A DNA stretch of 64,000 nt, from positions 276,173 through 340,172 of IMG/VR virus record IMGVR_UViG_3300042473_001265, one strand, 5' to 3'. The translations under genes and the position numbers were made by a program. Within the stretch, counting starts at the first letter, position 1, and every line of letters begins with the position of its first letter. The notes beneath the pieces were generated by a model. That model saw nothing but the letters and a program-made list of their open reading frames with translations. It was not told the origin of the DNA and made no database searches. Positions 41-22,507 of this stretch are shown here, one piece after another.

Positions 41-289
41 ATGCAAAAGAAAACTAGAAGTTTGTTAGAAGAACTCGATTCAATGTACGTTGAGCGTGAC
101 AACCGCCATGTGATTGAAAACCGTGCCAGTAACATCATAGCCAGTGCCATACGCCTGCTAGAGCAGATTGACTCCATTTACGAGCCCGAAACTGCTAAGA
201 ATTTACAACGCAAATTGCTCAATGCCATCAACCTGCGTGACCCAGGCAAATTTACCAGAACCGTGAGAAAAACTGATGCAAATTCATGA
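41..289 (+). CDS. Hypothetical phage protein (82 aa)
   Basis: Late-promoter-like GATAAATA at 11-18; ORF overlaps start of next gene. Confidence 0.7.
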
Positions 290-1829
290 ACTGAGTCGTA
301 GACGCCGCACAGACGAAGGTGTCTTTGACGTCGTTAAAGGTATCGGTAAGGCCGCAGGTTCTGCTCTCGGGGCTGCCACCGGCGTCACCAATCCCAATGC
401 ACAAGCAGCCTCTGCAGGAATTCTTGACCCTGCAAAAAAATTAGACGCAGTAAGAAAAAACAAGGACATGCAGAGAGTTGCTGCACAACTGGCCGCAGGA
501 TGGACTGCAGAAGCAACAAAACTAACTAAGGCACCAGCAGCTGGTGCAGCACCACTGCCCGAAGCAGTGGGCACATACAATAAAAAAACTGGCGCAGCAA
601 ATTTAGATGGTAAAACAATGACTTCATTGTCAGACTTGCCGCCTGCAATACAGCAACAGATACAAGCAAAACAACAAGCTGCTGTACCAGGCAGCGATGC
701 TACACCAACATCTGCAGAACAAGATGCAGCCGATGCAAGAGTTGCAGCTTCTGGTGCAAGTCCCGAAGAAGTTGCAAAGCAACGAGCAGCTAGAGAACAA
801 ACAATAGCAGCCAGAACTTCGCGTACTGCACCAACGGTCAAAACAGCTGATCCATCCGTTGATCCAAGATTAAATCCAACTGCTAATCCAAGATTAAATC
901 CAACTGCTAATCCGGCGATAAATCCAACTGCTAATCCGGCGATAAATCCAACTGCTAATCCGGCGATAAATCCAACTGCTAATCCGGCTGCCGCAACAAC
1001 AACACCAACTAAACCTGGCGCACCACCGGGATTCAATGCTGCCAATGTAATGAAGATGCCAGGCATGCAGCCGGCTGGTAAGAAACCTGCACCTGCCTCT
1101 GCTGCAACGACACCCAAGCCCGGTGCCCCTCCTGGATTCAATGCTGCCAATGTGATGAAGATGCCGGGCATGCCCGGACAACCTGCAACACCCGGGTCAA
1201 TAACACCCGGAGCAGCAGGAGGTGGTGCTGGACAGCCCGACGCAGTAACACCGCCTGCTGACCCGGCAGAAAAAGAATATTGGAACAAGTTTTTAGCATA
1301 TGTAAATAAAAAAACCGCCATTAGAGATGCCAGCACTTATCAAATGATCGGGCTAGATCAAATTCAAAAGCAATCTGGATATAAAAATGAACTTGAAGCA
1401 GCCAAAGCCAAAATTTTACAAGCATACAAAGCCGGGCAAGATGTAACACCAGCAGCCACTGAATATATATTGACAGCAATGGCTGGCGCCCAACTGATAT
1501 CTTCAAAAAATAGGGCCGGCGTGGAACTAGAACAGCCAGAAGTAGATCCAAACGATCCAGACGCTGCCGCAGGAGCCACAGGAGACAACGGTGCTGCCGC
1601 AGGCGGTGCAGCGCCTGGTACTGCGCCCGGTACTGCGCCCACTGCTGGTGGCAGAATTCTTGATACCGCAGGTGTACAAGGGCTATTCAAGTTGAACGGG
1701 GTTGATCCCGCACTGCTACCCAAACTTGGAACTGAATTAAGACGAGCCAGCGGAACCAACGCTGTGACCACAACTGGCAACGGCACAGTTGATAACATGC
1801 TGAAAGCATTGGGATTCAAAGTAACATGA
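276..1829 (+). CDS. Low-complexity Ala/Pro/Gly/Thr-rich protein with internal repeats, possible internal head protein
   Basis: 517 aa ORF, N-terminus MQIHEL...TDEG, tandem repeats, ATGA overlap with next gene. Confidence 0.75.
870..989 (+). repeat. Five tandem 24-nt units encoding (L/I)NPTANP(R/A)
   Basis: Units [t/a]taaatccaactgctaatcc[a/g]nnn start at 870, 894, 918, 942 and 966, in frame with the 276 ORF. Confidence 0.95.
994..1175 (+). repeat. Duplicated peptide block TP(T)[19 protein letters not shown]
   Basis: Two copies in the translation; DNA copies differ mainly at synonymous positions; ends approximate. Confidence 0.9.
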
Positions 1830-3694
1830 TATTAAAAGAAGGCGGCAATGTATTTAAAGATCAGAATGGTCGCATTCTGACTCAACGCATCAATCAAACA
1901 GACGTGAATCCCACCTTGGCCTGGTTGGAAATGCTGCTGCCGGGCCTGGATCTACAAAACAACAAACTGGGCTCAACTGGGCTAAAACCCACATCCGGTG
2001 ACTTGGATATAGCAGTGGATGCCAATGTTGTCAGCAAAGACCAATTGGCTGCAAAACTGACTCAGTGGGCTCAGAGCCATGGTCTCAAACCCGAAGACTA
2101 TGTGAAACGGTCCGGCATCAGTGTGCATTTTAAAACGCCCATCAATGGAAGACCCACAATGGGCTATGTGCAAACTGACTTTATGTTTTTGACCAATGTG
2201 CCATTCTCCAAGTTTGCGCTGACAGCCGCTGCTGACAGCAAGTACGGCGGATCTGATCGCAATGTGCTGATCAACAGCATAGCCAAAAGCATGGGTTACA
2301 AACTGAATCAAACTTCGGGCATTGCCGACCGCGCAACCAACAAAATTATCACAGATGATCCTGACAAGATTGCCAAGCTGTTGCTGAACAATCGTGCAAC
2401 CAAAGAAGATTTGTACAGTGTAGAAACTATTGTGGCTGCATTGGAACAGGATCCCAAGCGTGATGCCAAGTTGGCAGATGCTAGAGATCACTTTGCTAAA
2501 AAAGGTGTGCCTTTTATGGAAAGCGATGAACCAGTGTACAAAGAATACACCGAAGTGGATTTTCTTGCACGCCTGCGTGATCGTATTGTGAATCAAGGCA
2601 TGCAGGTCATTGTGGAAGGTGCAAAGGATGCCAGAATTGAACACTTAGAAGATCTAGTGTTTGAAAAAGGAACCCGGGGCATTCGTGAAGCAGTGGACAT
2701 CATGCGACATGCTGCTGAAAATACTAGAGCAACTACCACTGTCAAGTGGGATGGAAAGCCCGCCATTATATTTGGACGCAAGCCTGACGGCACATTTGTG
2801 CTCACAGACAAAAGCGGATTCAGTGCCAAAGGCTACGACGGCTTGGCCACATCACCGGAGCATATTCAACAAATAATGGCCCTGCGCAAAGGTGACAGAA
2901 CTGAACTGGTAGCTATCTATCAAAAGTTATTTCCTCTGTTACGGGCTGCCACTCCGGAAAACATGCGCGGCTATGTGCAAGGCGATCTGTTGTACACCAA
3001 CACTCCGCCCGAAGTTGCTGGCGCATTTGTGTTCCAACCAAACTTTGTTGAATACAAGATACCTGCTGGTAGTCAGCTGGGGCAGCGTATTGCTGCCAGC
3101 GAAGTGGGTGTTGCAATTCACACCAGATACAAAGATCCTGACAGTTCGCCTACTGCAATTAAAAACATCGCACTGGATCCTGTTCCAGGATTGTTGTTGA
3201 TTGAACCCAGTGTCAAAGACATTCAAAATATCGAACTCAATACTCAGTTGGTCAAGCAACTGAGTCAAATCATTTCTGTTCACGGCAAAGACATTGATGG
3301 ATTGTTCAATCCTGCGGACCTTCGTTCAGCTGGTATCACTGACTTACCACAGTTATGCAAACGCTATATCAATTCTAGAATTACCAGCAACTACGACAAC
3401 CTGCTGAATGGCTTTGGTGACTGGTTGCAGGCCAATGTGACACCACGCAAATTCAACAACATTGTGGAATATTTACAAAGCCCGCGATCCAACACCGACG
3501 GCATTACCGCAGCATTCGCAGCGTTCATGTTGTTGCACGATATCAAAACTGACATGTTGACACAGTTGGATCGTCAGCAGCCAGGCCAGGAAGGCTGGGT
3601 ACTAGCAACACCAGCAGGCCGCGCCAAACTGGTGAATAGATTTGGATTCAGTGCAGGAAACCGTGCTCTAAACAACCCAGAACAAGCAGCCTAA
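1826..3694 (+). CDS. Fusion of a pol-beta-type nucleotidyltransferase-like domain and a KWDG-motif ligase-like domain
   Basis: GSTG...SGDLDIAVD motif at N-terminus; RIEHLEDL...[13 protein letters not shown]...VLTDKSGF in C-terminal half. Confidence 0.65.
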
Positions 3695-3765: not shown

Positions 3766-4143
3766 ATGGCAAATATCACAACAGCAACGAACGGCACATA
3801 CCAACCAGTATCCAACATGGACTCTGGAACAGTAGCATCTTCACCAGGTGCTGGTTATCCAACACCGTTAAACAGCGCAACCAGTGCTGTCACAGTTAAC
3901 TTGGCTGGTCCAAAGTTAGACTTCTTCACAATCACTTTGGCAAGTTTGGCCACTAGTGGCGCAGTTTTGAATGCATGTATGCTTGCCATTCAAACCAAGG
4001 CCACTATTGCCATGTACGAAGTCACTGACGCTGGTACAGATACACTGGCTATTGCTGTGTATCCCACAGGCGCTTGGACCACTGCTACACTAGACACTGC
4101 CACTGGCGGTAGTACAGCAGCCACTGCAACATTCACAAACTAA
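3766..4143 (+). CDS. Small Ala/Thr-rich protein, probable virion structural component
   Basis: Own late promoter, strong SD and downstream terminator. Confidence 0.7.
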   Translation: MANITTATNGTYQPVSNMDSGTVASSPGAGYPTPLNSATSAVTVNLAGPKLDFFTITLASLATSGAVLNACMLAIQTKATIAMYEVTDAGTDTLAIAVYPTGAWTTATLDTATGGSTAATATFTN

Positions 4144-4162
4144 GCAATTAGTTTTTGATACA

Positions 4163-4195
4163 AAAACCCTGGATTAAAACCCAGGGTTTTCTTTT
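4163..4195 (+). terminator. Intrinsic terminator
   Basis: Perfect stem AAAACCCTGG/CCAGGGTTTT followed by a T-rich tract. Confidence 0.85.
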
Positions 4196-4213
4196 GGCGT
4201 TAAATACTTCATT

Positions 4214-4468
4214 ATGATGGTGAGCAAGATTACCGAAGTGACGATATTTGAAAGTCCAGATGGCGGCCGGACAGTGTATGCACGTCACCCAGGCGCACAG
4301 AATCGGTCACTGCATTATCAAGATCCCAAACTAAAACAAGAACTAGATGAATTAGAACACAAGCGCCGCTGGGCAGAAATATTTGAATCCCGGCACAACA
4401 ATGTAGCACTCAATGAACTGTGCAGTAAAGTTGAAGTGCTGTATGAATTGAGTAAAAAGAACAAATGA
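4214..4468 (+). CDS. Hypothetical protein
   Basis: 84 aa ORF just after TTAAATA; ATGA overlap with next gene. Confidence 0.7.
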   Translation: MMVSKITEVTIFESPDGGRTVYARHPGAQNRSLHYQDPKLKQELDELEHKRRWAEIFESRHNNVALNELCSKVEVLYELSKKNK

Positions 4469-4905
4469 AATATGCAGTACAAACTTTCTTTGACATAACA
4501 GCCACTGGAATTACAGGACATTTTAAACCGTCAAGGATTCCGTTTCGCGACAATGCAGGAAATATGATAACCGATGCAGAATCCTGGAATCGTGCTAGAA
4601 ATCAACAACGCAACTGGGAAACCGTAACACAGATTCTTGGACTAAGAACTCAGCTGTTCCGCCTGCAAGATCCCATAGTAGACACATCACGCAGTGCATG
4701 GATGTTTGAATTCGAAACAGAATCTGACAACATATACGGCAATGATGTTGATCCCACCAGCATATTGAGAGCCGATGCGGATGGTGTGCCCATGCTGACC
4801 GGACTGGATAACAAGCACGAATTGGCATCGACCATTGTCACTCAGGGCCCGGCTCAGAATATTTGGTTTGTTCCGGTCTCCATAAATAGATCAACGGAGA
4901 CTTAA
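4465..4905 (+). CDS. Hypothetical protein
   Basis: 146 aa ORF in a translationally coupled run. Confidence 0.7.
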   Translation: MKYAVQTFFDITATGITGHFKPSRIPFRDNAGNMITDAESWNRARNQQRNWETVTQILGLRTQLFRLQDPIVDTSRSAWMFEFETESDNIYGNDVDPTSILRADADGVPMLTGLDNKHELASTIVTQGPAQNIWFVPVSINRSTET

Positions 4906-5169
4906 ATGGTTGATACTACCAATATTGAAAAGAAAAGTTTAGAAGCACATGTGGAACTGTGTGCTGAACGCTACAGTGCGTTGGAATCAAGATTGGATAA
5001 TGTAGATTCTAAAATTTCTCAGCTTGAAAAAATCATTTGTGAAGTGCGCGACATGGTACAGTCCATGGCCGAAAAACGCAATGATCAATTGATCAACTGG
5101 GGCATAGGTACCATTGGTACACTAGTTGCTGTGGTTGGGTACCTTATTACACAATACGTTCTTAAATGA
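4906..5169 (+). CDS. Coiled-coil protein with C-terminal transmembrane helix
   Basis: Heptad-rich N-terminus, hydrophobic WGIGTIGTLVAVVGYLI; late promoter CATAAATA 4881-4888 and SD GGAG. Confidence 0.7.
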   Translation: MVDTTNIEKKSLEAHVELCAERYSALESRLDNVDSKISQLEKIICEVRDMVQSMAEKRNDQLINWGIGTIGTLVAVVGYLITQYVLK

Positions 5170-5663
5170 CCCTAGACACACAATTTGAACGCCTGTTTAA
5201 AACTGAGTTTGCGGCGCTACAGTCCAACAGTCTTTGGAAAAATGATGCTGGAGAATACCAAGTATTTGGGCGTTATCGCATTGTGAAAGAATCAGCAGGC
5301 TACAGAGTATACTGTTCTCTAACTGAAGTTGGGCTTTTTCACAGCACAAGAGCAGCACTGAGCTGGTGTATTGCCGACAAGTTTGCGCGGTATAACACAG
5401 CCAGGGATATACTACAGCTGGACAATAATTTACATTTTTTAACAGTGGATATCAACACCAGAGCTGCCCTGGGTGATCGTGCAAAAACTGCTGATCAGCA
5501 TGAAATTATACTGACCAAGCTGGAAAGTAAAATTATACAGAAAAAAGAGATAGAAAATAGGTTAGACATTTGTGTCAACTGGGCTAAATATTATCAACAA
5601 CAAGGATTCGACAATGAAACTGCAAGACCTGGCCGTGCTGCCACAAACAAAACAAATCGCTAA
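5166..5663 (+). CDS. Hypothetical protein
   Basis: 165 aa ORF, ATGA overlap. Confidence 0.7.
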   Translation: MTLDTQFERLFKTEFAALQSNSLWKNDAGEYQVFGRYRIVKESAGYRVYCSLTEVGLFHSTRAALSWCIADKFARYNTARDILQLDNNLHFLTVDINTRAALGDRAKTADQHEIILTKLESKIIQKKEIENRLDICVNWAKYYQQQGFDNETARPGRAATNKTNR

Positions 5664-6483
5664 AGTATTCGAAAGTTACTTTGGTAATACCATTACCTTT
5701 GAATCAATTTCCAAGCGCCATGCACATGCCATGTTGGGCCGAGTACGCAGCTTGATAAGCGAGCACCGTGCCACCACTTCCTATCATGGCAGTGAAAAAA
5801 GCCCAGCCTACTTAAAGTTGGTAATGATGGAACAAGTGCTGACCAAGAAACTTCGTGAAGAATTTCCAAGCACTGATGGCACTGCTGCGGTTGATCCAGC
5901 CAAGACCAAACAGGCCCTGGCCAAAATTCAAGATCCCAAACTCAAAGCTGCCATGACCAAAAGCGCAGCCGGACAGACACTTTCACCAGACGAACAAAAA
6001 CTTGTGCAAGGTGCAGCACTGCAAGCAGTGGCCGCAGAAAGCCGTCGTAGAACTGGTCGCCGTTTGAGTGAAAGCGAAGTGCAACAAGCTCAGGTTATCC
6101 TGGCCAGTCAAGACATGGTTGACCAAGTACAGAAGATGATTGAACAGGTCACTTCGTTACAATTTAAAGATTTGCCTGCGTTGGTAGATCAGATTCGCAA
6201 TGAAATTGGCTACGAGCAAGCAACAAAATTCAATGCCGACGCAACTGCTGCACTGGGCGGCATGGTTCAAAACTTGCAGGGCTCCAAAACACAATTGGAA
6301 GCTGCAATGGGCACAGTCACTGGTCAAGCTCCAGTAATACCCGGCGGCGATGTAGCTGCTGAATTACCAGTTGATCCAATGGCTGATCCAATGGCTGCTG
6401 CGCCAGCAGATGATTTAGACATCGATGTTGATGCAGACATTGAAGAACCAGTTTCGGCTGGTCTAGGTCGCGATCGCAGATAA
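5614..6483 (+). CDS. Hypothetical helical protein with acidic tail, possible head assembly/internal protein
   Basis: Start moved to ATG 5614 (SD AAGGA, late motif CTAAATA near 5584); L-x-E motifs (VFES, LSES). Confidence 0.65.
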   Translation: MKLQDLAVLPQTKQIAKVFESYFGNTITFESISKRHAHAMLGRVRSLISEHRATTSYHGSEKSPAYLKLVMMEQVLTKKLREEFPSTDGTAAVDPAKTKQALAKIQDPKLKAAMTKSAAGQTLSPDEQKLVQGAALQAVAAESRRRTGRRLSESEVQQAQVILASQDMVDQVQKMIEQVTSLQFKDLPALVDQIRNEIGYEQATKFNADATAALGGMVQNLQGSKTQLEAAMGTVTGQAPVIPGGDVAAELPVDPMADPMAAAPADDLDIDVDADIEEPVSAGLGRDRR

Positions 6484-6824
6484 TGCGTTTACGAGAGTTC
6501 GCTGAAGATCAAGCTGATGGTCAAAAACTTGCGGCATTGGCCACCTTTCTCAGCGACCGAGCCAATGACGAAGCAGCAGCAAAACAAATTAGCAAAAAAA
6601 CATTCATCGAACTTGCCCGCTCTGTGGGTGTCAATGTAAACGACACCAATCTCAATGACATGGTTGCTGCTGAACCACTCAGCAACATCCTCAACCCAAT
6701 TGATACTGGTTCAGACATAATCAGTTTCAAAGGCGACACAGAAGCTGCCACCGGCATGAGTGTTGATCAAGCTCAAGAAGTGGTCAACAGCAATGCCAAG
6801 TCGGCAATGAAACGCCGTCAGTAA
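6483..6824 (+). CDS. Hypothetical protein with MRLREFAE leader
   Basis: 113 aa ORF, TAATG overlap. Confidence 0.7.
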   Translation: MRLREFAEDQADGQKLAALATFLSDRANDEAAAKQISKKTFIELARSVGVNVNDTNLNDMVAAEPLSNILNPIDTGSDIISFKGDTEAATGMSVDQAQEVVNSNAKSAMKRRQ

Positions 6825-6949
6825 CACACTCAAAATCGCAGTATACTCAAAAGACTAGTAAATACACTGAGAGTGTAGTATACTATACGCATAGCTATTA
6901 TTACGATAGCTGTAAATTCAACAATTTAATACAACAGGAAATTTTTTAA

Positions 6950-7153
6950 ATGGCATCAGGTAAAGTAAAATGGTTTAATGAAACCAAAGGTTTTGGGTTT
7001 ATTACTCCAGACGCAGGCGGAGAAGAACTGTTCGCACACTACACAGCAATTCAAACAGATGGATTCAAGGTCCTCAAAGAAAATCAGCGTGTATCTTACG
7101 ATGTAGTTCAAGGACAAAAAGGCCTGCAAGCATCTAACATTGTGCCACAGTAA
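6950..7153 (+). CDS. cspA: Cold-shock protein (CSD)
   Basis: [15 protein letters not shown] (RNP1) and LFAHY (RNP2); 67 aa. Confidence 0.97.
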
Positions 7154-7162
7154 ATCGCAACA

Positions 7163-7185
7163 GGCCGGGTTACTCCGGCTTTTTT
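7163..7185 (+). terminator. Intrinsic terminator after cspA
   Basis: GCCGG/CCGGC stem followed by TTTTTT. Confidence 0.8.
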
Positions 7186-7209
7186 ATCAAATTATAAAAC
7201 AATCAACAT

Positions 7210-7593
7210 ATGGCCTATTCAGAAAAAGTAGTTGATCATTATGAGAACCCAAGAAATGTAGGCAGCTTTGCCAAAGAAGATGGTGATGTCGGCACAGGCA
7301 TGGTCGGGGCTCCGGCCTGCGGCGATGTGATGAAGCTGCAAATCAAAGTCACCGACGGAGTAATCACAGATGCAAGATTTAAAACATACGGTTGCGGCAG
7401 CGCGATTGCGTCAAGTTCGCTTGTTACTGAATGGGTCAAAGGACTCACCCTTGAGCAGGCGGAAACGATCAAAAATAGCGAAATTGCTACTGAGCTTGCC
7501 CTTCCCCCTGTTAAAATTCATTGTTCAATACTTGCAGAAGATGCCATCAAAGCGGCGGTAGCTGACTATAGAATCAAGCATCCAGCGCAATGA
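7210..7593 (+). CDS. iscU: Fe-S cluster scaffold IscU
   Basis: YSEKVVDHYENPRNVG, GAPACGDVM, GCGSAIASSS, LPPVKIHCS. Confidence 0.97.
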   Translation: MAYSEKVVDHYENPRNVGSFAKEDGDVGTGMVGAPACGDVMKLQIKVTDGVITDARFKTYGCGSAIASSSLVTEWVKGLTLEQAETIKNSEIATELALPPVKIHCSILAEDAIKAAVADYRIKHPAQ

Positions 7594-7913
7594 TCGAAGT
7601 CACTGACACTGCTGCTAAAAAAATTAAAAAAAGTTTAGCCGCTCGCGGTCGCGGTGAAGGCATCCAAATTGGTGTACGAACCACTGGTTGTTCGGGACTT
7701 GCTTATGTGTTAGAATATGTAGACAATCCCAATTTGCATTGTGTACGACATTACGATTCAAATGGTGTACGGGTGTTCATTGATCCCAAACACCTGCCGT
7801 ACTTGGATGGCATGATAGTAGATTTCAAAAGGAACGGCCTCAACGAAGGTTTTGAGTTTATCAACAAAAACGAGCGCGACCGCTGCGGTTGCGGAGAATC
7901 ATTCAGAGTTTAG
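7590..7913 (+). CDS. iscA: A-type Fe-S carrier IscA
   Basis: TTGCSGLAY and C-terminal CGCGESF. Confidence 0.95.
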   Translation: MIEVTDTAAKKIKKSLAARGRGEGIQIGVRTTGCSGLAYVLEYVDNPNLHCVRHYDSNGVRVFIDPKHLPYLDGMIVDFKRNGLNEGFEFINKNERDRCGCGESFRV

Positions 7914-9542
7914 ATGAGAGTAAAATTTTGTTCGCATAGTCTGACACAACTAATCAAGCATGAAAAAGTCAGTGTAAATCCTGCATGGCTCTACATGCAA
8001 AAATGGTACGAACTGCATGGAAAAAATCCCAATGTAAAATGGTTGCTTCCTGGGATTGTATTATTAGATCCAATGGATGTTGTAATTGATAAAATTGTGC
8101 AAGAACAACCTGATATTTTGGGTCTTGGATTCTATGTTTGGAACTTTGACTTGCAATATCACATTGCCAGAGAAGTTAAAAAACAATTACCAGATATAAT
8201 TATAGTCTGCGGCGGTCCGCAACTATCGGTACACAAAGAAACAGAGACTGACAACCAAGTTGATTTTTTCATCAACCATCCGTATATAGACTATGTAGTG
8301 TACGGCGACGGCGAACGACCATTTCAGCAAATTATTGATTATCATTCCGGGCTCCTGTTCAATAAAGACGAGTTTGTTAACATTATTGAAAATGCCAATG
8401 GGGTAAGAAAAATATATCCGCACGAAACGTTGACAGATGAACTTTACCTAAGTCAAAGTCCTTATGTGAGTCAAGAAGCTCATATGGCCGAAGTGCGTGA
8501 TCATCTGGCAGCTTACGGAATTCCAATCGAAGACCAATACTGGGCTATTGAATTTGCCCGAGGATGTATGTATAGTTGTACATTTTGTGATTGGTCACAA
8601 AATTTAACTAAAAAAGTCAAACGTCGTACACACAACTGGAAACACGATATTGATTTGTTCCATCGACTAAATGTGGCCATACGAGAAACAGATGCCAACT
8701 TTGGACAATGGCCAGATGACATAAAAGCGTTTGATTATGCAATTTCTTTATATGATCCTGCTCGTAGTTTTTCTTTTATAGTGAACAACACTCCCAAACT
8801 CAAGAAAGATGTAACCGAGTATATTATTACTCAAAATAGTCTTGTGTATGATGTTCCGCCTGTGATCAATCTTCAAGATGCCGATGAAGATGTATTAAAG
8901 GCAATCGATCGTCCAGCAGTTCCGTGGGAAGCTATTGTTAAAATGACAAACAATCTAAGAAATAACTTACCGCCTGAAAAATTTCGCAAGACAGAACTGC
9001 AATGCATACTAGGGTTACCGGGGCAAACAGTTGACAGTCTAATTAATTCTTATGTTAAGTTTTTTGAATTGGGCTTGTTAAGAGCTTCATGGGCCAATTG
9101 GTCATTTTTACCAAACAGTCCAGCAGCTGATCCTGCTTATCAAAGATTCTGGGGGCTTGATATCAAGGAAGTGTACTTTGCATTTGAGTCTCATGTGGTG
9201 CCAGATCTTGGGGAACTATACAGCGAGTTAGCGTCTGGCAACAGTTTGTCAGACAAATTTTATAAGCTACCAATGGTGGTTGGTCATAAAACAATGAAAA
9301 TGTTAGATTTATGGACTGCTCAAATACTAGCAAAAAAATGGAACGAGTTGACTAGTCGTGTAGATCTAGTAGAAAAATACAATAGTTCTCAGGTAAGAAA
9401 CATACTGGGTAAATTAAAAACACACGCAATAAAAGAAGCAACAACACAATATGACATACATCAACACCATATCAACCAGCATGGTATTGTTGTATGGGGT
9501 CATTACCAAACTGAATCAAAACTCATACACAAAAATCTTTAA
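7914..9542 (+). CDS. Cobalamin-binding-domain radical SAM protein
   Basis: CxxxCxxC (CMYSCTFC) preceded by B12-BD-like region (GFYVWN, CGGPQ, YGDGE); GLPGQT; AT-rich. Confidence 0.85.
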   Translation: MRVKFCSHSLTQLIKHEKVSVNPAWLYMQKWYELHGKNPNVKWLLPGIVLLDPMDVVIDKIVQEQPDILGLGFYVWNFDLQYHIAREVKKQLPDIIIVCGGPQLSVHKETETDNQVDFFINHPYIDYVVYGDGERPFQQIIDYHSGLLFNKDEFVNIIENANGVRKIYPHETLTDELYLSQSPYVSQEAHMAEVRDHLAAYGIPIEDQYWAIEFARGCMYSCTFCDWSQNLTKKVKRRTHNWKHDIDLFHRLNVAIRETDANFGQWPDDIKAFDYAISLYDPARSFSFIVNNTPKLKKDVTEYIITQNSLVYDVPPVINLQDADEDVLKAIDRPAVPWEAIVKMTNNLRNNLPPEKFRKTELQCILGLPGQTVDSLINSYVKFFELGLLRASWANWSFLPNSPAADPAYQRFWGLDIKEVYFAFESHVVPDLGELYSELASGNSLSDKFYKLPMVVGHKTMKMLDLWTAQILAKKWNELTSRVDLVEKYNSSQVRNILGKLKTHAIKEATTQYDIHQHHINQHGIVVWGHYQTESKLIHKNL

Positions 9543-9545
9543 CCA

Positions 9546-10262
9546 ATGTACAATCCAAAATTCAACTATCACTCACTTGCCCGAGAGCAAGTGGACGGAA
9601 AACGTCTATATGCCACTCCTGATGGCAACAGGGTTCCTAGTGTAACCACTATTCTTGACAAGACCAAACCTGCAGAAAGTCGCATTGCACTGGCCAACTG
9701 GCGTAAAGCAGTGGGCGAAACAAAAGCACAGCAAATCACAACAGAAGCGGCCAACCGCGGCACAAGAATGCACACCTATCTTGAAAACTATGTCAAGACA
9801 GGCGAAATCAAAGACAAAGGCACCAATCCGTTTGGATGGGCAAGTCACGCCATGGCCGAAGTTGTGATCGAAAACGGGCTTAAAAATGTAGATGAGTTTT
9901 GGGGTGTGGAAGTGCCCTTGTACTTTCCCGGCATTTACGCAGGTACAACAGACTGCTGTGGCATGCACAACAACCAACAAAGTATTTTGGACTTTAAGCA
10001 AACAAACAAGCCCAAAAAAATTGAGTGGATTGAAGACTATTTCTTGCAACTGTGTGCCTATGCCGAAGCGCACAACGAAGTGTACGGCACAGACATACGC
10101 AAAGGTGTCATTTTAATGTGCGTTAAACCCACCACAGATGACATGGGCAATGTGACCAGCGCACCGCAATACCAAGAATTTGTCATTGAAGGTGCGGAAT
10201 TTGACCACTGGAAATCCCAATGGTGGAAAAGAGTCGAACAGTATTATCTGCTAAATAGTTGA
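9546..10262 (+). CDS. PD-(D/E)xK exonuclease (Cas4/MGME1-like)
   Basis: PSVTTIL, RGTRMH, YAGTTD, LDFK, QLCAY motifs. Confidence 0.85.
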   Translation: MYNPKFNYHSLAREQVDGKRLYATPDGNRVPSVTTILDKTKPAESRIALANWRKAVGETKAQQITTEAANRGTRMHTYLENYVKTGEIKDKGTNPFGWASHAMAEVVIENGLKNVDEFWGVEVPLYFPGIYAGTTDCCGMHNNQQSILDFKQTNKPKKIEWIEDYFLQLCAYAEAHNEVYGTDIRKGVILMCVKPTTDDMGNVTSAPQYQEFVIEGAEFDHWKSQWWKRVEQYYLLNS

Positions 10263-10280
10263 CAACAGAGGACAACTAAA

Positions 10281-11864
10281 TTGGCTATTGTACAAATTTC
10301 GCGAATTACCCAGCGTAAAGGGTTACAAGAAGATCTACCGCAATTGGCAGGCGCTGAATTGGGATGGAGTATCGACGAACGCAGATTGTTCATTGGTAAC
10401 GGAACATTGGAAGAAGGTGCTCCAGTAATTGGTAATACAGAAATTCTCACTGAATTTTCTGACTTATTGTATCTGGTGCAAGATTATGTATATTCGGGCC
10501 AAGAAGCCACCGGATACACAGTACAAACAGGTGCAACACCCGGAACTCCGGTTCAACTGTCCTTGCAAAACTGGATGGATCAATTTGCCACAGTCAAAGA
10601 CTTTGGTGCAGTTGGCAACGGTGTTGCTGACGACACTGCGGCCATTAACCGCGCACTTTATCAATTGTACTGTAGAGAAGTGAATCCTGCAATTCGTAGA
10701 AGTTTATTCTTTCCAGCTGGCATTTACAAAGTTTCAGGCACTATTGTTATTCCACCCTATGCCACACTGATTGGCGAAGGCCCCAAGAACAGTATTATTC
10801 AACTGACAGCAACTGCCACAGCAGTTTACACAATGCAGACTGGCGACAGCCTACAACAGACCGGTGTCAACATTGGCACCAATGGCGCTCAACCTCCAAT
10901 AAGTGTCACATGTGAAAATATGGCCTTTGCCAGTCTCAAAGCAACAGATGTTGCATGTATAGAACAGGCAACTGAATTTGTGTTTAATCAGGTTGAATTC
11001 CTTGGACCATTGACCACTGTTGATTTGACATCGGCTGTGGCCGATATTTCGTGTGTTAAATTTATCAGTACTGCTGCCAATGACACGCATCAGATCAAGT
11101 TTGACAACTGTACATTCTCCGGCTGTACCTATGGCATGCGAACAGATCAGCAGGTGCGTGGTATTGACTTTACTGGATCACATTTCTCCACACTGTTCGA
11201 AGGCATACTGGTTGAGCCAAACCCCCTGGGTTCTGCCTATGACCCGCGTGGTATTGGCATACAAAGTTGCGACTTTGATACTATCTATGCTCGCGGCATT
11301 GTGTTTGAAGTGGAACGCAATGCCACTGCACAAAATACATTCGGTGATGTCGGCAACCACTTTGGTGGTGTCACACAGCCCTACACTGCCATTATTGATT
11401 TTGTATCGCCCAACAACATCAGCGTTGGCGATATTTTTGATCGACCAGACCAATATGCCACACTGTATCCCAGAGTTGATTTGAATGGCACTGCCAGCAT
11501 TGCGTTTACCAATGGTCAACAGTTGGCCATGGGTCCGTATGTGCGAGAATCTGGCCTCACAGCAACATTGAACAACAATGTAACTTCGCCCACTGCTGCT
11601 TTTTCTTACAGTGAACTTGACACCTGGTCACTCAACATTGATTACAGCATTTCTAGAAGCACTGCATATAGAACTGGCAGAATTACTGTTGTTTTATTTG
11701 ACGGCGCCGGTGCGCTAACATACACTGATGATTTTTCTGAAAATACTTCTACTGGCATCACGCTGACAGTGTCACAGACCGGTAATGAAATTTTTGTAAA
11801 CTACGTCAGCACAAATACCGGCACCGGTGGATCGATAACCTACAGCATAAACCATATACATTGA
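10281..11864 (+). CDS. Tail/baseplate-associated protein: Mtd-like N-terminal anchor plus pectate-lyase-3-like beta-helix
   Basis: PQLAGAELGWSIDERRLFIGNG; VKDFGAVGNGVADDTAAI; late motif CTAAATA at 10251. Confidence 0.75.
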   Translation: MAIVQISRITQRKGLQEDLPQLAGAELGWSIDERRLFIGNGTLEEGAPVIGNTEILTEFSDLLYLVQDYVYSGQEATGYTVQTGATPGTPVQLSLQNWMDQFATVKDFGAVGNGVADDTAAINRALYQLYCREVNPAIRRSLFFPAGIYKVSGTIVIPPYATLIGEGPKNSIIQLTATATAVYTMQTGDSLQQTGVNIGTNGAQPPISVTCENMAFASLKATDVACIEQATEFVFNQVEFLGPLTTVDLTSAVADISCVKFISTAANDTHQIKFDNCTFSGCTYGMRTDQQVRGIDFTGSHFSTLFEGILVEPNPLGSAYDPRGIGIQSCDFDTIYARGIVFEVERNATAQNTFGDVGNHFGGVTQPYTAIIDFVSPNNISVGDIFDRPDQYATLYPRVDLNGTASIAFTNGQQLAMGPYVRESGLTATLNNNVTSPTAAFSYSELDTWSLNIDYSISRSTAYRTGRITVVLFDGAGALTYTDDFSENTSTGITLTVSQTGNEIFVNYVSTNTGTGGSITYSINHIH

Positions 11865-12289
11865 AGTGGCCTGCAACATTTGAAGCAAGACTCGACAGCT
11901 GGAATCAACTTCGAACACAAGTTGCTGACCAGCCTGTTGAATCGGCACTGGAAACCATTAACTCTTGGTGGTTTCAATCTCCTTGGACTGCTTACCATTT
12001 GCACTGGGACGACCAAATCACTTGGCCGGATCCTTGGCAGTTGTTGAGCGACAACATGTATTGTGAGGTTGCAAGAGGGCTGGGAATCCTGTATACTATA
12101 ACATGCTTGAATCGTGGCGATATGGACTCTGCAGAGCTGGTTTTGACCAATGATGGCCGTAATTTAGTCCTCGTGGACAAATCTAAATATATACTGAATT
12201 GGGACCGGACAGTTGTATTAAATACCAGCTCGGAGATAGAAGTCAAGAAGAGCCTGCACCAGTCACAGATAACACAGCAGTACAAGTAA
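11861..12289 (+). CDS. Hypothetical Trp-rich protein
   Basis: 142 aa ORF with TTG start overlapping the previous stop. Confidence 0.65.
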   Translation: MKWPATFEARLDSWNQLRTQVADQPVESALETINSWWFQSPWTAYHLHWDDQITWPDPWQLLSDNMYCEVARGLGILYTITCLNRGDMDSAELVLTNDGRNLVLVDKSKYILNWDRTVVLNTSSEIEVKKSLHQSQITQQYK

Positions 12290-12306
12290 AATAACAAGAG
12301 AAGTAA

Positions 12307-14636: not shown

Positions 14637-15134
14637 ATGAAAATAAATGAACTGTTAGAAAGTGCAGATGACATAGAGTTCAAGGCAAAAACTCTTGCTG
14701 TTGATGCACACAAGAACCAAAAATACGGTGTACACCCTTATGTCACTCATTTGGCGGATGTTGTTGCCCGTGTTAAAACAATTACACAAGACCCGGAAAT
14801 AATTGCTGCTGCTTGGTTGCATGATATAGTGGAAGATACAGATGTTACCTTAGAACAAATCAAACAACAATTTGGTGATAATGTTGCCAATATAGTTTGG
14901 GCAGTGACAGGACGCGGAGAGAACCGAAAAGAAAAAATGGCAAATGCCATTGCCAAGATTGCTCAAACTCCGGGAAGTGAATTGGTAAAGAGTGCAGACC
15001 GATTGAGCAATGTTTCTGCCAGTTTAGCAAACAATCCAAAAAAACTTAAAATGTACCGAGATGAACACAAGGATTTGAGTCCAGTCTTGGGCAATAATGC
15101 ATTGGCTTTAGAGCTAGTGGATTTATTTAAATAA
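14637..15134 (+). CDS. Stand-alone RelA/SpoT-type HD hydrolase (small alarmone hydrolase-like)
   Basis: PYVTH, AAWLHDIVEDT, VKSADRLSN; leader MKINELLES. Confidence 0.85.
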   Translation: MKINELLESADDIEFKAKTLAVDAHKNQKYGVHPYVTHLADVVARVKTITQDPEIIAAAWLHDIVEDTDVTLEQIKQQFGDNVANIVWAVTGRGENRKEKMANAIAKIAQTPGSELVKSADRLSNVSASLANNPKKLKMYRDEHKDLSPVLGNNALALELVDLFK

Positions 15135-20964: not shown

Positions 20965-21129
20965 ATGAAACAATCAACTTTTCGTCTGTGGTTAACACAG
21001 ATGTGGATGGAAAATCGCGAAGAACATCAGGCCCATCGAGAGCCTGTTGTCAGCCAACAAGAGTATTTTAACCGATACAAATATTGGCTTAAACGAGAGT
21101 ATAAACATCAGCAACGCAACAGTAAATAA
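20965..21129 (+). CDS. Small hypothetical protein (54 aa, MKQSTFRLWL...)
   Basis: Not in ORF track; fills the gap and ends 1 nt before the ligase ATG. Confidence 0.6.
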   Translation: MKQSTFRLWLTQMWMENREEHQAHREPVVSQQEYFNRYKYWLKREYKHQQRNSK

Positions 21130-21130
21130 C

Positions 21131-22507
21131 ATGAACAAAATAGATTTTAGCACAAAAGAATTTGAAGGGATCAAGTTGGCAGCAGACTGGATTCGAGATC
21201 TTGAAAGCAGCGACAGTAGATTACACAAAGAATCTGTGATCGAAAAAGCCTATGTGGCCTCACAACTTGGCAGCGCCAGTGCTCAATGCTTTTTGTTCAA
21301 CTGCTATCAGGCCTACAACCCTTTCTATGTGTTCGGCGTCAAACAAATACCCGAGACTACTGGACTTGAGAACCAACCCAACAACTGGCCTGTGTTCTGG
21401 GCCTTGTGTGAAGCACTGCGCACTCGTAGCTTGACCGGACACGAAGCTCGTGATCGTATTGCGGCCGTGAGCCAAGAGTTTGACAGTGCCGAATGGAACA
21501 TGTTGTGTCGTCGAGTGCTGATCAAAGACCTGCGATGCGGCATCAGTGAAAAGACCATCAACAAAGTTGTGGGCCGAACAGAATGGAAGATCCCTACCTT
21601 TACTTGTCAGCTGGCACAGGACTCCACCGACCACCCCAAGAAGATGAAGGGCATCAAACGCCTGGAAGTCAAATTGGACGGTGTGCGTGTGATTGCAGTG
21701 GTGTCGGGCAATAGCTGTGTGTTGTACAGCCGCAATGGCAAGGAGTTTGAAAACTTTCCGCAGATTGCTGAGGCTATCTTGGACAACCGTCGGGCATTCC
21801 AACACGGTCGAGGCACAGGTGGACACTTTGTGTTGGATGGTGAAATTGTAGGTGAGAATTTCCAAGCCTTGATGAAACAGGCACAACGCAAAAGCAATGC
21901 CAAAACAACTGGTATGGTTTATCACATTTTTGATATCATTCCATTGGATGCACTCAAAGAAGGCCATTGCAACTTGCAACAGCACAAACGTATAGCATGG
22001 CTAGAAAGTGCAAAAACGGTGTTGGACGAAACCGATTGTTTGCGTATCATGCCGGGTATGGATGTGAACCTGGACACTGCGGAAGGACATGATGTTATGC
22101 GCAGGTTTGCTGAAGCGTCAGTTGAGCAAGGATATGAAGGCATCATGATTAAAAATCTCGATGCTCCGTACGAATGCAAACGCAGTGATCACTGGATGAA
22201 ATGGAAACCCACCATCACAGTGGATTTGACCATTGTGGGTTTTGAAGAAGGAACTGGTCGCAATGCAGGCCGGTTGGGTGCTATAATTTACGAAGGAGTT
22301 GATAATGAACGAAATATTCGGGTTAATGTTGGTACTGGCTATAGTGATAATGATCGTGATGAGTTTTGGGCTGCCCGGGATCAGTTACTTGGTGTCATTG
22401 GCGAAATCCAAGCTGATGCAGTTACTCAAAATCAAGACGGATCATACAGTTTGAGATTCCCTAGGCATGTTCGGTTCCGTGGATTTGAAGCCGGGGAGAA
22501 ACTGTAA
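21131..22507 (+). CDS. ATP-dependent DNA ligase
   Basis: Motif I EVKLDGVR, LDGEI, EGIMIK, WMKWK, OB-fold SLRFPR; start moved to ATG 21131. Confidence 0.95.
   Translation: MNKIDFSTKEFEGIKLAADWIRDLESSDSRLHKESVIEKAYVASQLGSASAQCFLFNCYQAYNPFYVFGVKQIPETTGLENQPNNWPVFWALCEALRTRSLTGHEARDRIAAVSQEFDSAEWNMLCRRVLIKDLRCGISEKTINKVVGRTEWKIPTFTCQLAQDSTDHPKKMKGIKRLEVKLDGVRVIAVVSGNSCVLYSRNGKEFENFPQIAEAILDNRRAFQHGRGTGGHFVLDGEIVGENFQALMKQAQRKSNAKTTGMVYHIFDIIPLDALKEGHCNLQQHKRIAWLESAKTVLDETDCLRIMPGMDVNLDTAEGHDVMRRFAEASVEQGYEGIMIKNLDAPYECKRSDHWMKWKPTITVDLTIVGFEEGTGRNAGRLGAIIYEGVDNERNIRVNVGTGYSDNDRDEFWAARDQLLGVIGEIQADAVTQNQDGSYSLRFPRHVRFRGFEAGEKL

What the first reader, a model, noticed from the sequence alone, without database searches (positions are those of the whole stretch)
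1826..3694. Nucleotidyltransferase plus ligase-like fusion, possibly a cleavable RNA-repair polyprotein
The N-terminal ~230 aa has the pol-beta superfamily GS...DxD signature. The C-terminal half has KWDG, matching the KxDG motif I of covalent nucleotidyltransferases (RNA/DNA ligases). The linker has further Glu motifs (FME|SD, VIVE|GA) like the N-terminal ILKE|GG. Inference: a head-packaged polyprotein cut into two enzymes that repair host-nicked tRNA/RNA or counter nucleotide-based defence.
Basis: partly seen in the sequence, partly recalled or inferred. Interest (0 to 1): 0.72.

Follow-up and report, generated by a model that had tools for sequence, protein, structure and literature searches.

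The report
Phage PolX polymerase fused to ligase
This jumbo-phage gene joins a stripped-down family X DNA polymerase to a highly divergent ligase (DUF6267, until now of unknown function), most likely a fill-the-gap-and-seal-the-nick DNA repair enzyme, and the same ligase module is the only ligase-like gene detected in a T4-like cyanophage, a group long thought to lack one.

Summary
The N-half (aa 6-225) is more specific than a generic pol-beta nucleotidyltransferase. It is a minimal family X DNA polymerase, palm plus thumb only, as in ASFV PolX (Z 9.2-10.9; acidic triad D59/D61/D118 conserved). The C-half (aa 265-622, Pfam DUF6267) has the ligase nucleotidyltransferase fold. In an unbiased search all 25 PDB chains with Z>=5 are ATP-dependent RNA/DNA ligases. 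K307-x-D-G is invariant, a 112-aa helical insert is present, and there is no OB domain. The two modules recur fused in both orders, as overlapping adjacent genes, or alone, usually downstream of the replicative primase-helicase. The best reading is DNA gap filling plus nick sealing, not tRNA repair. (L/I)-x-E precedes both modules. Leaderless relatives start exactly after it. The genome encodes a T4 gp21-type prohead protease. A PolX-like homologue in phage PA5oct was detected in virions by mass spectrometry. This is a new variant of a known kind (compare the giant-virus PolX-ligase fusion and bacterial LigD).

The parts
1826..3694 (+). Whole gene: PolX-like polymerase module fused to DUF6267 ligase-like module (622 aa plus stop)
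   Evidence: ORF list; full-length form conserved at 73-97% identity in more than 100 metagenomic proteins on contigs up to about 350 kb
1826..1840 (+). Five-residue leader MILKE ending in L-x-E; candidate prohead-protease site after E5
   Evidence: L/I at position 3 in 75 of 80 and E5 in 75 of 80 relatives. Longer leaders of the M-(R/K)-(L/F/I)-x-(E/D)-(F/L/I) type in relatives. Leaderless homologues start at the G-G-N motif
1841..2500 (+). Minimal family X polymerase core (aa 6-225): palm plus thumb, no 8-kDa or fingers subdomains
   Evidence: AF2 model pLDDT 94.5. VIA Z 10.9 to Pol lambda and Z 10.8 to Pol beta, where model 11-200 aligns with Pol beta 139-335. Unbiased search: all 9 chains with Z>=8 are PolX, including ASFV PolX at Z 9.2. 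Swiss-Prot best hit is B. subtilis PolX, E 9.5e-6
1970..2008 (+). G49-S-T-G...G58-D59-L-D61: nucleotide-binding loop and first two catalytic aspartates
   Evidence: G49 99%, G52 99%, D59 99%, D61 100% conserved; coordinates checked
2168..2188 (+). V-Q116-T-D118-F-M-F strand carrying the third catalytic aspartate
   Evidence: Q116 100%, D118 99%, M120 96%; also kept in PA5oct gp253 and the Atu_ph07 homologue
2237..2332 (+). Thumb segment S-K-Y-G-G-S-D-R...G165...R169
   Evidence: G142 90%, R145 84%, S151 90%, G165 100%, R169 95%. This region (about aa 131-200) aligns with PolX chains; nearly all other pol-beta-fold enzymes align over the palm only
2501..2617 (+). Inter-module linker (aa 226-264), poorly conserved except for its end I262-V-E264, the second candidate protease site
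   Evidence: Low pLDDT at the end of the N model and the start of the C model. (L/I)-x-E in 95% of C-half relatives, followed by a spacer of 0 to about 20 residues. FME|SD not conserved
2618..3691 (+). DUF6267 module (aa 265-622): ligase-type nucleotidyltransferase fold
   Evidence: Pfam PF19782, E 1.3e-37. AF2 pLDDT 91.9. VIA top 50 entries all ligases, best Z 7.7. Unbiased search: all 25 chains with Z>=5 are ATP-dependent RNA/DNA ligases. AFDB 'RNA ligase domain-containing protein', E 2.2e-6
2633..2656 (+). R-I-x-H273-x-E275-D276-L block at the start of the module; family-specific, role unknown
   Evidence: H273 99%, E275 and D276 100%. Standalone proteins without a leader start just before it
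2744..2755 (+). Motif I K307-W-D-G: predicted nucleotidyl-accepting lysine
   Evidence: K307, D309 and G310 invariant in 92 sequences. Lies in the loop between strands 304-307 and 313-318 of the model. Also K-I-D-G in PA5oct gp256
2969..2995 (+). Candidate motif III, G382...G386-D387-L-L-Y, on a beta strand
   Evidence: G382 97%, G386 92%, D387 97%. PA5oct gp256 has E-I-E-V-L-Y at the equivalent place. Assignment by order and secondary structure only
3032..3055 (+). Candidate motif IIIa, F403-x-P-N-x-V-x-Y410
   Evidence: F403 95%, P405 98%, N406 91%, Y410 100%; P-N-V-I-E-Y in PA5oct gp256
3242..3577 (+). All-helical insert (aa 473-584) between motif IIIa and motif IV; takes the place of the missing OB domain; contains invariant K574
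   Evidence: Helices 218-329 of the C-half model. Ligase alignments span it and align only about 180 core residues. K574 100%
3590..3649 (+). Candidate motifs IV (E589-G-x-V592) and V (K601-x-V-x-R605...F608) on an antiparallel hairpin
   Evidence: E589, G590, V592, R605 and F608 invariant; K601 and V603 99%. Strands 590-595 and 598-603. Matched in PA5oct gp256 by hhalign, probability 90%, E 1.6e-6
276..1829 (+). Upstream 517-aa low-complexity gene, translationally coupled to the target and syntenic in relatives; starts MQIHEL
   Evidence: ATGA overlap. Both termini similar to the gene preceding the fusion in L011. Member of the leader class
41..289 (+). 82-aa gene of the conserved trio (82 aa, low-complexity gene, fusion); homologues annotated as virion structural protein
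   Evidence: phrog_11854, E 7e-16. Homologue PA5oct gp259 lies directly after primase and DnaB

Best explanation
The gene encodes two enzymes in one chain that together finish the repair of a broken DNA strand. The N-module is a minimal family X polymerase (palm and thumb only). It would use D59, D61 and D118 to add one or a few nucleotides to a 3'-OH at a short gap. The C-module (DUF6267) is a divergent ligase. K307 would take up a nucleotidyl group (AMP from ATP is the default guess), pass it to the 5'-phosphate, and the nick would then be sealed. Shown here: both folds, the conserved catalytic-type residues, the repeated fusion, splitting and adjacency of the two modules, and their conserved position in replication-gene neighbourhoods. 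Inferred: the substrate (phage DNA, either during lagging-strand maturation or as nicks and gaps in the genome), the cofactor, and every activity. A further, weaker inference is that the chain is cut after E5 and E264 by the phage's gp21-type prohead protease and travels in the capsid.
For: N-module: Foldseek probability 1.00 to Pol lambda/mu/beta. VIA Z 10.9 to Pol lambda and 10.8 to Pol beta, covering Pol beta 139-335. In an unbiased search all 9 chains with Z>=8 are PolX, including ASFV PolX with 151 of 176 residues aligned, while other pol-beta-fold enzymes reach at most Z 7.5 and nearly all align over the palm only. Swiss-Prot shows the same two tiers. The acidic triad is 99-100% conserved. 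C-module: the top 50 VIA entries are all ligases. All 25 chains with Z>=5 among 48,161 are ATP-dependent ligases. An AFDB entry named as having an RNA ligase domain matches at E 2.2e-6. KxDG is invariant, and candidate motifs III, IIIa, IV and V follow in the right order on strands. Linkage among the 150 best representatives: N-C 51, C-N 6, C alone 52, N alone 36. Split genes with overlapping stop and start occur in L003-L007. PA5oct has a divergent PolX-like gp253 and ligase-like gp256 three genes apart. In Atu_ph07 the PolX-like gene sits next to a gene with a weak RNA_ligase match. Context: downstream of primase and DnaB/gp41 in this genome, L011, L007, PA5oct, Atu_ph07 and Syn1. Precedent: the PgV PolX-ligase fusion performs gap filling and sealing in vitro (PMC5537341).
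Against: No activity was measured. The ligase Z-scores (at most 7.7) are in the range the tool calls middling, and no residue-level superposition was available, so motifs III-V are assigned only by order and conservation. The best structural matches are RNA ligases (Rnl5, Trl1, REL1, Rnl2), slightly ahead of DNA ligases, and there is no OB domain. The genome already has a canonical ATP-dependent DNA ligase at 21047..22507, so this one is not needed for bulk sealing. No Xth- or Nfo-type AP endonuclease was found in the genome, so a complete phage base-excision pathway is not evident. The polymerase lacks the 8-kDa and fingers parts that position most PolX enzymes on gaps.
Confidence: 0.6

Rival explanations
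1. The first reader's version, which is compatible with the main explanation. The protein is a capsid-targeted precursor. The gp21-type prohead protease cuts after E5 and E264, releasing a separate polymerase and ligase inside the head, and these enter the cell with the DNA to mend the incoming genome.
For: (L/I)-x-E directly precedes both modules in 94-95% of relatives. In the C-half a spacer of 0 to about 20 residues follows it, which is unlike a catalytic residue. Homologues without a leader start exactly at G-G-N or at R-I-x-H-x-E-D, so the Glu is dispensable for the folds. Many relatives carry a longer M-(R/K)-(L/F/I)-x-(E/D)-(F/L/I) leader on either module. The genome encodes Peptidase_S77, E 9e-25. 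gp21 cuts after L/I-X-E, and a 10-residue leader targets proteins into T4 heads (PMC9026906). PA5oct gp253, a PolX-like homologue, is annotated as detected in virions by ESI-MS/MS (PMC7318152). Two flanking genes match PHROGs labelled virion structural protein. The leader class is enriched, 8 ORFs against 2.6 expected, P about 0.004. The C-N fusion in L013 lies beside the terminase and portal genes.
Against: There is no proteomic or cleavage evidence for this protein. Its leader is only 5 residues, against 10 in T4. The PA5oct study itself lists 7 'virion-unrelated enzymes' among its MS hits, and gp253 has no leader. PA5oct gp256 (ligase-like) is not marked as MS-detected. The gene's usual neighbours are replication genes. 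Leader-class ORFs also include an HD phosphohydrolase and a methyltransferase-like protein. General N-terminal (L/I)-x-E enrichment is not significant, 52 against 43 expected. Cyanophage homologues lack the motif.
Confidence: 0.35
2. An RNA repair enzyme. The N-module adds nucleotides to broken RNA or tRNA 3' ends and the C-module is an RNA ligase that reseals host-cleaved tRNA, as in T4 Pnkp/Rnl1.
For: The top structural matches of the C-module are RNA ligases: Naegleria Rnl5, fungal Trl1, REL1, T4 Rnl2 and Rnl1. There is no OB domain. The phage has a separate DNA ligase. Some long relatives carry NT5C/HAD phosphatase-like domains that could heal ends.
Against: The N-module matches DNA polymerases of family X through its thumb, not CCA-adding enzymes, TUTases or poly(A) polymerases. 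No kinase or phosphatase end-healing domain is present in this protein or its neighbours. There are no tRNA genes in the window. The conserved context is primase-helicase. Scores for RNA and DNA ligases differ by only about one Z unit.
Confidence: 0.15
3. The folds are retained but the chemistry is different: nucleotidylation of a protein or small molecule, cap-like guanylylation, or a purely structural role.
For: Relatives are fused to cytidylyltransferase-like, amidoligase, Cu/Zn superoxide dismutase and NT5C domains, which are not classical DNA repair partners. Capping enzymes share the fold at Z 4.2-4.8. The invariant H273/E275/D276 block has no counterpart that I can name in known ligases.
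Against: Full catalytic-type residue sets are conserved in both modules. The PolX thumb implies a primer-template substrate. The two modules are linked to each other far more consistently than to any other domain.
Confidence: 0.07

Closest known systems
African swine fever virus PolX (with the separate ASFV ligase)
   Same: Minimal family X polymerase made only of palm and thumb. 151 of its 176 residues superpose on the N-module at Z 9.2. The virus pairs it with a repair ligase. The absence of the 8-kDa and fingers parts is described as unique to ASFV PolX in PMC5537341.
   Different: Sequence identity is only about 16%, and Pfam PolX models do not detect the phage module. Here the polymerase is fused to the ligase, the ligase belongs to a different, OB-less family, and the host is a bacterium.
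Phaeocystis globosa virus PgVPolX (PolX fused to an NAD+-dependent DNA ligase)
   Same: The same order of modules, PolX at the N-terminus and ligase at the C-terminus. It was shown in vitro to fill a gap and seal the nick (PMC5537341).
   Different: PgVPolX has a complete Pol beta-like core with an 8-kDa dRP-lyase domain and a LigA-type ligase. The phage protein has neither. Its ligase module resembles ATP-dependent RNA/DNA ligases (Z up to 7.7) more than an NAD+-ligase adenylation domain (Z 4.3).
Bacterial LigD (non-homologous end joining)
   Same: One protein, or adjacent genes, combines a gap-filling polymerase with a ligase, and in some relatives with an end-cleaning domain. Domain order varies between lineages. 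This comparison rests on my own knowledge.
   Different: The LigD polymerase is of the archaeo-eukaryotic primase type, not PolX. Its ligase has an OB domain and it works with Ku. Ku was not searched for here.
T4 Rnl2, Naegleria Rnl5 and trypanosome REL1 nick-sealing RNA ligases
   Same: These are the best structural matches of the C-module. They share the nucleotidyltransferase core with KxDG and use non-OB accessory domains.
   Different: In DUF6267 the helical accessory module is inserted between motifs IIIa and IV rather than appended. Motif V reads K-x-V-x-R, and an extra invariant H-x-E-D block precedes motif I. No sequence-level similarity is detectable.
T4 internal proteins and Alt (capsid-targeted, gp21-processed, injected proteins)
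   Same: A short N-terminal leader ends in (L/I)-x-E, and a gp21-family protease is encoded by the genome (PMC9026906).
   Different: The cargo would be a DNA repair enzyme pair, with a second internal site between two enzymes. Neither packaging nor cleavage has been shown.

Membership tests
Family X DNA polymerase | Pol beta-type palm with G-S...G-D-x-D and a third acidic residue on a later strand | tested here: met
   G49/G52/D59/D61/D118 are 99-100% conserved; the palm superposes on PolX and other pol-beta-fold enzymes
Family X DNA polymerase | PolX-type thumb directly after the palm | tested here: met
   Model residues 131-200 align with Pol beta up to residue 335, Pol lambda up to 575 and ASFV PolX up to 169. 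Non-PolX enzymes nearly all align only over residues 23-130
Family X DNA polymerase | 8-kDa (dRP lyase / 5'-phosphate binding) domain and fingers subdomain | tested here: not met
   Only 5-10 residues precede the palm. The same absence is known for ASFV PolX (PMC5537341)
Family X DNA polymerase | Recognition by the curated sequence models (Pfam DNA_pol_B_palm and DNA_pol_B_thumb) | tested here: not met
   No Pfam match for aa 1-270 at E up to 0.1; no PDB match by profile
Family X DNA polymerase | Template-directed nucleotide addition on gapped DNA | not testable with these tools
   Needs an enzyme assay
Covalent nucleotidyltransferases (ATP-dependent ligases) | Nucleotidyltransferase domain fold | tested here: met
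   All 25 chains with Z>=5 among 48,161 are ATP-dependent RNA/DNA ligases, with about 160-200 residues aligned; the top 50 entries of the Foldseek-seeded list are all ligases. Z stays at or below 7.7
Covalent nucleotidyltransferases (ATP-dependent ligases) | Motif I K-x-D-G with an invariant lysine in a loop between two strands | tested here: met
   K307, D309 and G310 invariant in 92 sequences; position in the model
Covalent nucleotidyltransferases (ATP-dependent ligases) | Motifs III, IIIa, IV and V in order on the core strands | tested here: inconclusive
   Candidates are G-D387-L-L-Y, F403..Y410, E589-G-x-V and K601-x-V-x-R605, conserved and in the right order and shared with PA5oct gp256. 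No residue-level structural alignment was available
Covalent nucleotidyltransferases (ATP-dependent ligases) | OB-fold domain after the nucleotidyltransferase domain (DNA ligases and capping enzymes) | tested here: not met
   Only helices follow motif V; a 112-residue helical insert lies before motif IV
Covalent nucleotidyltransferases (ATP-dependent ligases) | Recognition by curated ligase sequence models | tested here: not met
   No Pfam, NCBIfam or PDB sequence match; hhalign against the window's own ligase gives probability 0.4%
Covalent nucleotidyltransferases (ATP-dependent ligases) | Formation of a lysyl-nucleotide adduct and nick sealing | not testable with these tools
   The attempt to dock ATP was not folded by the tool and gives no evidence either way
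Pfam DUF6267 (PF19782) | Score above the curated gathering threshold | tested here: met
   130.5 bits against a cut-off of 27, aa 271-612
T4-type capsid-targeted, gp21-processed proteins | (L/I)-x-E cleavage motif at the N-terminal boundary of the mature part | tested here: met
   L3-K-E5 and I262-V-E264; conserved in 94-95% of relatives
T4-type capsid-targeted, gp21-processed proteins | gp21-family prohead protease in the same genome | tested here: met
   Peptidase_S77, E 9.2e-25, at G000 C1:197443-197898
T4-type capsid-targeted, gp21-processed proteins | N-terminal targeting leader of about 10 residues | tested here: inconclusive
   Only 5 residues in this protein. Leaders of 10-20 residues occur in many relatives, and the leader class is enriched in this genome at P about 0.004
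T4-type capsid-targeted, gp21-processed proteins | Presence in virions and observed cleavage | not testable with these tools
   Indirect only: the PA5oct gp253 homologue is annotated as ESI-MS/MS detected (PMC7318152)
Phage tRNA repair (Pnkp plus Rnl1 type) | Polynucleotide kinase/phosphatase end-healing partner and a tRNA-related context | tested here: not met
   No such domain in the protein or its neighbours; no tRNA genes in the window

The most novel reading that the evidence does not exclude
Marine and other jumbo phages with T4-type heads use (L/I)-x-E-bounded leaders and linkers to load a DNA repair kit into the capsid. The kit is a minimal PolX and a DUF6267 ligase, and in relatives also phosphatase and nucleotidyltransferase modules. 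The prohead protease cuts the chain into separate enzymes, which are injected with the genome and mend nicks, gaps or host-nuclease damage before any phage gene is expressed. Separately, DUF6267 would be the 'missing' DNA ligase of T4-like cyanophages.
Probability: 0.3. Interest if true: 0.8.

Novelty: new variant of a known kind. Interest (0 to 1): 0.62.

Why it matters
Three points.

1. It gives a concrete, testable function to DUF6267, a family with thousands of members and no literature (0 papers). It also defines a phage clade of minimal family X polymerases that curated models miss.

2. A 2010 review states that cyanomyoviruses have no homologue of the T4 DNA ligase gene and that distant homologues might remain unidentified (PMC2984593). 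In cyanophage Syn1 I found no ATP-type, NAD-type or Rnl2-type ligase, but a DUF6267 gene sits in the replication module. That turns an old open question into a simple complementation or enzyme assay.

3. If the (L/I)-x-E boundaries are real protease sites, this would be an enzyme polyprotein delivered through the capsid. That would extend the T4 internal-protein principle to DNA repair, and the only parallel known to me (from my own knowledge) is the packaging of repair enzymes by ASFV.

The compact OB-less ligase and the 220-residue polymerase could also interest enzyme engineers.

Tried and rejected
- Sequence-only routes failed. phmmer and profile searches of the PDB found nothing meaningful for either half. 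NCBIfam and PADLOC gave nothing. hhalign of the C-half profile against the window's own canonical ligase gave probability 0.4%.
- Foldseek alone was weak for the C-half (best E 8e-3, TM about 0.2). The fold call rests on VIA-align and AFDB.
- The single complex-prediction job (C-half plus ATP) was not folded by the tool and is no evidence.
- A base-excision partner was sought and not found: no Exo_endo_phos or AP_endonuc_2 in the genome.
- PA5oct gp257 and gp258, which are MS-detected structural proteins at the syntenic position, are not related to either module or to the 517-aa upstream gene.
- The Syn1 upstream gene is not a hidden PolX module.
- The Atu_ph07 ligase-like neighbour has too few homologues to confirm. 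Its RNA_ligase match is sub-threshold (E 0.002), and hhalign to DUF6267 aligns the KxDG region only at probability 1%.
- Promoter and terminator scans did not exceed shuffled controls.
- A general excess of (L/I)-x-E in the first 15 residues of the genome's ORFs is not significant (52 against 43).
- Several contigs fetched to check adjacency were too short to inform.
- The idea of a role against nucleotide-based defence was dropped for lack of any support.


Full report
**What is there.** The window is the last 64 kb of a 340,172-bp virus record rated 98% complete, so this is a jumbo phage. The ORF at 1826..3694 (+) is uninterrupted and encodes 622 aa. Its ATG overlaps the stop codon of the upstream 517-aa gene as ATGA. 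Pfam recognises only aa 271-612, as DUF6267 (E 1.3e-37), and PHROGs gives a family of unknown function. No paper in the library mentions DUF6267.

**Two independent modules.** The protein has more than 4,200 detectable homologues. The full-length form is conserved on contigs up to about 350 kb. I mapped both halves onto the 150 best cluster representatives. The arrangements are N-C fusion 51, reversed C-N fusion 6, C-half alone 52 and N-half alone 36, plus a few with split hits and proteins up to 1,308 aa. In marine metagenome contigs the 'standalone' N-half gene is followed at once by a DUF6267 gene with overlapping stop and start codons. In another contig two genes separate them. In the phage collection the C-half stands alone in T4-like cyanophages and the N-half in Agrobacterium phage Atu_ph07. 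The pattern is the classic signature of two proteins that work together.

**N-module.** An AlphaFold2 model built on an 80-sequence alignment is confident (pLDDT 94.5).
- Foldseek against the PDB returns family X polymerases with probability 1.00.
- VIA-align gives Z 10.9 to Pol lambda and 10.8 to Pol beta. Model residues 11-200 lie on Pol beta 139-335, that is, palm and thumb to the very C-terminus.
- A Foldseek-independent search of 48,161 chains is two-tiered. All nine chains with Z>=8 are family X enzymes: Pol beta, Leishmania Pol beta, Thermus PolX, Pol lambda, TdT, Pol mu and ASFV PolX (Z 9.2, 151 of 176 residues aligned).
- In that search TUTases, Trf4, GLD-2, CD-NTases, OAS and CCA-adding enzymes reach at most Z 7.5, and nearly all of them align over only about 85-90 palm residues.
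- Swiss-Prot models show the same split.
- D59, D61 and D118 are 99-100% conserved, and the thumb segment has its own conserved motif.
- Nothing precedes the palm except a few residues, so the 8-kDa and fingers parts are absent. Published work describes ASFV PolX as the only known PolX with that architecture (PMC5537341).
- Curated sequence models do not detect the module.

**C-module.** The model is again confident (pLDDT 91.9).
- Foldseek alone is weak.
- VIA-align finds 83 chains with Z>=5, and its top 50 entries are all ATP-dependent RNA or DNA ligases.
- In the unbiased search all 25 chains with Z>=5 are ATP-dependent ligases. Unrelated folds begin at Z 4.8, and capping enzymes and an NAD+-ligase adenylation domain score between 4.2 and 4.8.
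- AFDB clusters add an entry named as having an RNA ligase domain at E 2.2e-6.
- The best Z is 7.7, which the tool itself calls middling. The argument rests on the purity of the hit list together with the conserved residues.
- K307-x-D309-G310 is invariant and sits in a loop between two strands. G-D387-L-L-Y, F403...Y410, E589-G-x-V592 and K601-x-V-x-R605 follow in the order expected for motifs III, IIIa, IV and V, the last two on a hairpin. I could not obtain a residue-level superposition, so these four assignments are provisional.
- Departures from known ligases: there is no OB domain; a 112-residue helical insert lies between IIIa and IV; and an invariant H273-x-E275-D276 block precedes motif I.

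**Context.** In this genome a UvsW-like helicase, a Toprim primase and a DnaB-like helicase lie 3-11 kb upstream on the same strand. The same neighbourhood recurs in a 59%-identical relative, in a split-gene contig, in Atu_ph07, in PA5oct and, for the standalone ligase module, next to gp41 in cyanophage Syn1. An 82-aa gene and a low-complexity gene precede the fusion in several of these. The window also holds a canonical ATP-dependent DNA ligase at 21047..22507. The genome has one copy of each module and no detectable Xth or Nfo AP endonuclease. Longer relatives add cytidylyltransferase-like, NT5C/HAD, amidoligase, PDDEXK nuclease or Cu/Zn superoxide dismutase domains.

**PA5oct.** Profile searches over the fetched loci revealed that PA5oct gp253 (237 aa) is a PolX-like homologue (hmmsearch E 4e-19; hhalign probability 99.1%, 187 columns) with the acidic triad intact. 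The record annotates it 'structural protein, ESI-MS/MS'. The underlying study reports 93 gene products in virion preparations, including 7 'virion-unrelated enzymes' (PMC7318152). Three genes upstream, gp256 matches the motif IV-V region of DUF6267 (hhalign probability 90%, E 1.6e-6). Its sequence also shows K-I-D-G, E-I-E-V-L-Y and P-N-V-I-E-Y in the expected order. Thus the pair is conserved even where sequence similarity is almost gone.

**Most likely mechanism.** A polymerase built for short gaps, joined to a nick-sealing enzyme and placed in replication-gene neighbourhoods, most simply fills and seals breaks in phage DNA. The PgV PolX-ligase fusion does exactly this in vitro (PMC5537341), and bacterial LigD is a functional analogue (my own knowledge). 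I put this at 0.6. The RNA-repair reading (0.15) is favoured only by the slightly better scores of RNA ligases and the lack of an OB domain. It is disfavoured by the PolX thumb, the context, and the absence of end-healing domains and tRNA genes. A ribonucleotide-patch mode, as in LigD, would reconcile both but is speculation.

**The cleavage idea.** The FME|SD site is not conserved. The other two sites are more interesting than I expected.
- (L/I)-x-E directly precedes both modules in 94-95% of relatives.
- In the C-half the Glu is followed by a spacer of 0 to about 20 residues and lies in a low-confidence segment.
- Proteins that begin with either module often carry an M-(R/K)-(L/F/I)-x-(E/D)-(F/L/I) leader ending in that tripeptide. 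Leaderless homologues begin exactly at G-G-N or just before R-I-x-H-x-E-D. So the Glu belongs to a leader, not to the folds.
- The genome encodes a gp21-type protease. gp21 cuts after L/I-X-E, and a 10-residue leader suffices for capsid targeting in T4 (PMC9026906).
- The leader class is enriched in this genome (8 ORFs against 2.6 expected, P about 0.004) and brackets the target.
- Two nearby genes match PHROGs labelled virion structural protein.

Against this: the leader here is only five residues; there is no proteomic evidence for this protein; the class includes an HD hydrolase and a methyltransferase-like protein; and cyanophage homologues lack the motif. I rate processing and packaging at about 0.35. 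It is compatible with the main explanation.

**Cyanophage ligase.** Syn1 has no match to the ATP-dependent DNA ligase, NAD+-ligase or Rnl2-type RNA ligase models, and no PolX-like module. Its DUF6267 gene lies between gp41/mazG and gp61/nrdA. More than 200 cyanophage records carry the module. A 2010 review notes that cyanomyoviruses lack a g30 homologue and that distant homologues might remain unidentified (PMC2984593). DUF6267 is a candidate for that role. Only one cyanophage genome was checked for other ligases.

**Verdict.** The object is a new variant of a known kind, a PolX-ligase repair fusion built from a minimal phage PolX and a previously unassigned, OB-less ligase family. It may carry an additional layer of capsid targeting and proteolytic release. 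All functional statements are inferences from fold, conserved residues and gene context.

Noticed in passing
window 21047..22507 (+): Canonical ATP-dependent DNA ligase (PF01068 plus an OB domain) of 486 aa, with about 195 residues before the adenylation domain that match no Pfam family. The phage therefore has two ligase-fold genes.
   Followed up: partly
window 276..1829, 5614..6483, 6483..6824, 14637..15134; G000 C1:62707, 62991, 66378, 74306: A class of ORFs starts M-x-(L/F/I/M)-x-(E/D)-(L/F/I/M): 8 observed against about 2.6 expected. They lie in two clusters. The class includes a 1,466-aa LysM protein, a PHROG 'virion structural protein', an HD phosphohydrolase between nrdA and nrdB, and a methyltransferase-like protein. 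This may be a capsid-targeting leader.
   Followed up: partly
window 276..1829 (+): A 517-aa Ala/Pro/Asn-rich low-complexity protein with tandem N-P-T-A-N-P-(A/R)-(I/L) repeats. Only its two termini are conserved with the 287-aa syntenic gene of a relative. It is translationally coupled to the target.
   Followed up: partly
window 6950..9542 (+), and G000 C1:274395-275438: A run of auxiliary genes: a cold-shock protein, IscU-like and IscA-like Fe-S assembly proteins, then a B12-binding radical SAM enzyme. A second radical SAM gene lies just upstream of the window.
   Followed up: no
L016 (PA5oct NC_071039.1) 9119..10459 and 11715..12428: PA5oct gp256 ('hypothetical protein') is a divergent DUF6267/ligase-like protein with K-I-D-G. 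gp253 ('structural protein, ESI-MS/MS') is a PolX-like polymerase module. Neither is annotated as such.
   Followed up: yes
L001 (cyanophage Syn1 NC_015288.1) 5977..7173: Syn1_160 (T4-GC 71) is a standalone DUF6267 in the replication module of a genome with no other detectable ligase. The next gene is annotated cytidyltransferase, echoing the DUF6267-cytidylyltransferase fusions seen elsewhere.
   Followed up: partly
L002 (Atu_ph07 MF403008.1) 4013..4987: The gene directly upstream of the standalone PolX-like gene has a sub-threshold RNA_ligase match (E 0.002) spanning the whole profile, and E-K-L-D-G at residue 8. This may be a different ligase type in the same partnership.
   Followed up: partly
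ESM Atlas clusters: DUF6267 is fused to Cu/Zn superoxide dismutase in a 65-member viral cluster. The PolX-like module is fused to a PDDEXK nuclease in an archaeal cluster and to NTP_transf_2 in another.
   Followed up: no
window 10281..11864 (+) and 28044..29252 (+): A pectate-lyase-like beta-helix protein (possible depolymerase or tail fibre) and a ClpX-like AAA+ unfoldase with a zinc finger.
   Followed up: no
L013 225..2072: A reversed-order fusion (DUF6267 then PolX-like, 615 aa) lies next to the large terminase and a T4-type portal gene rather than replication genes.
   Followed up: no
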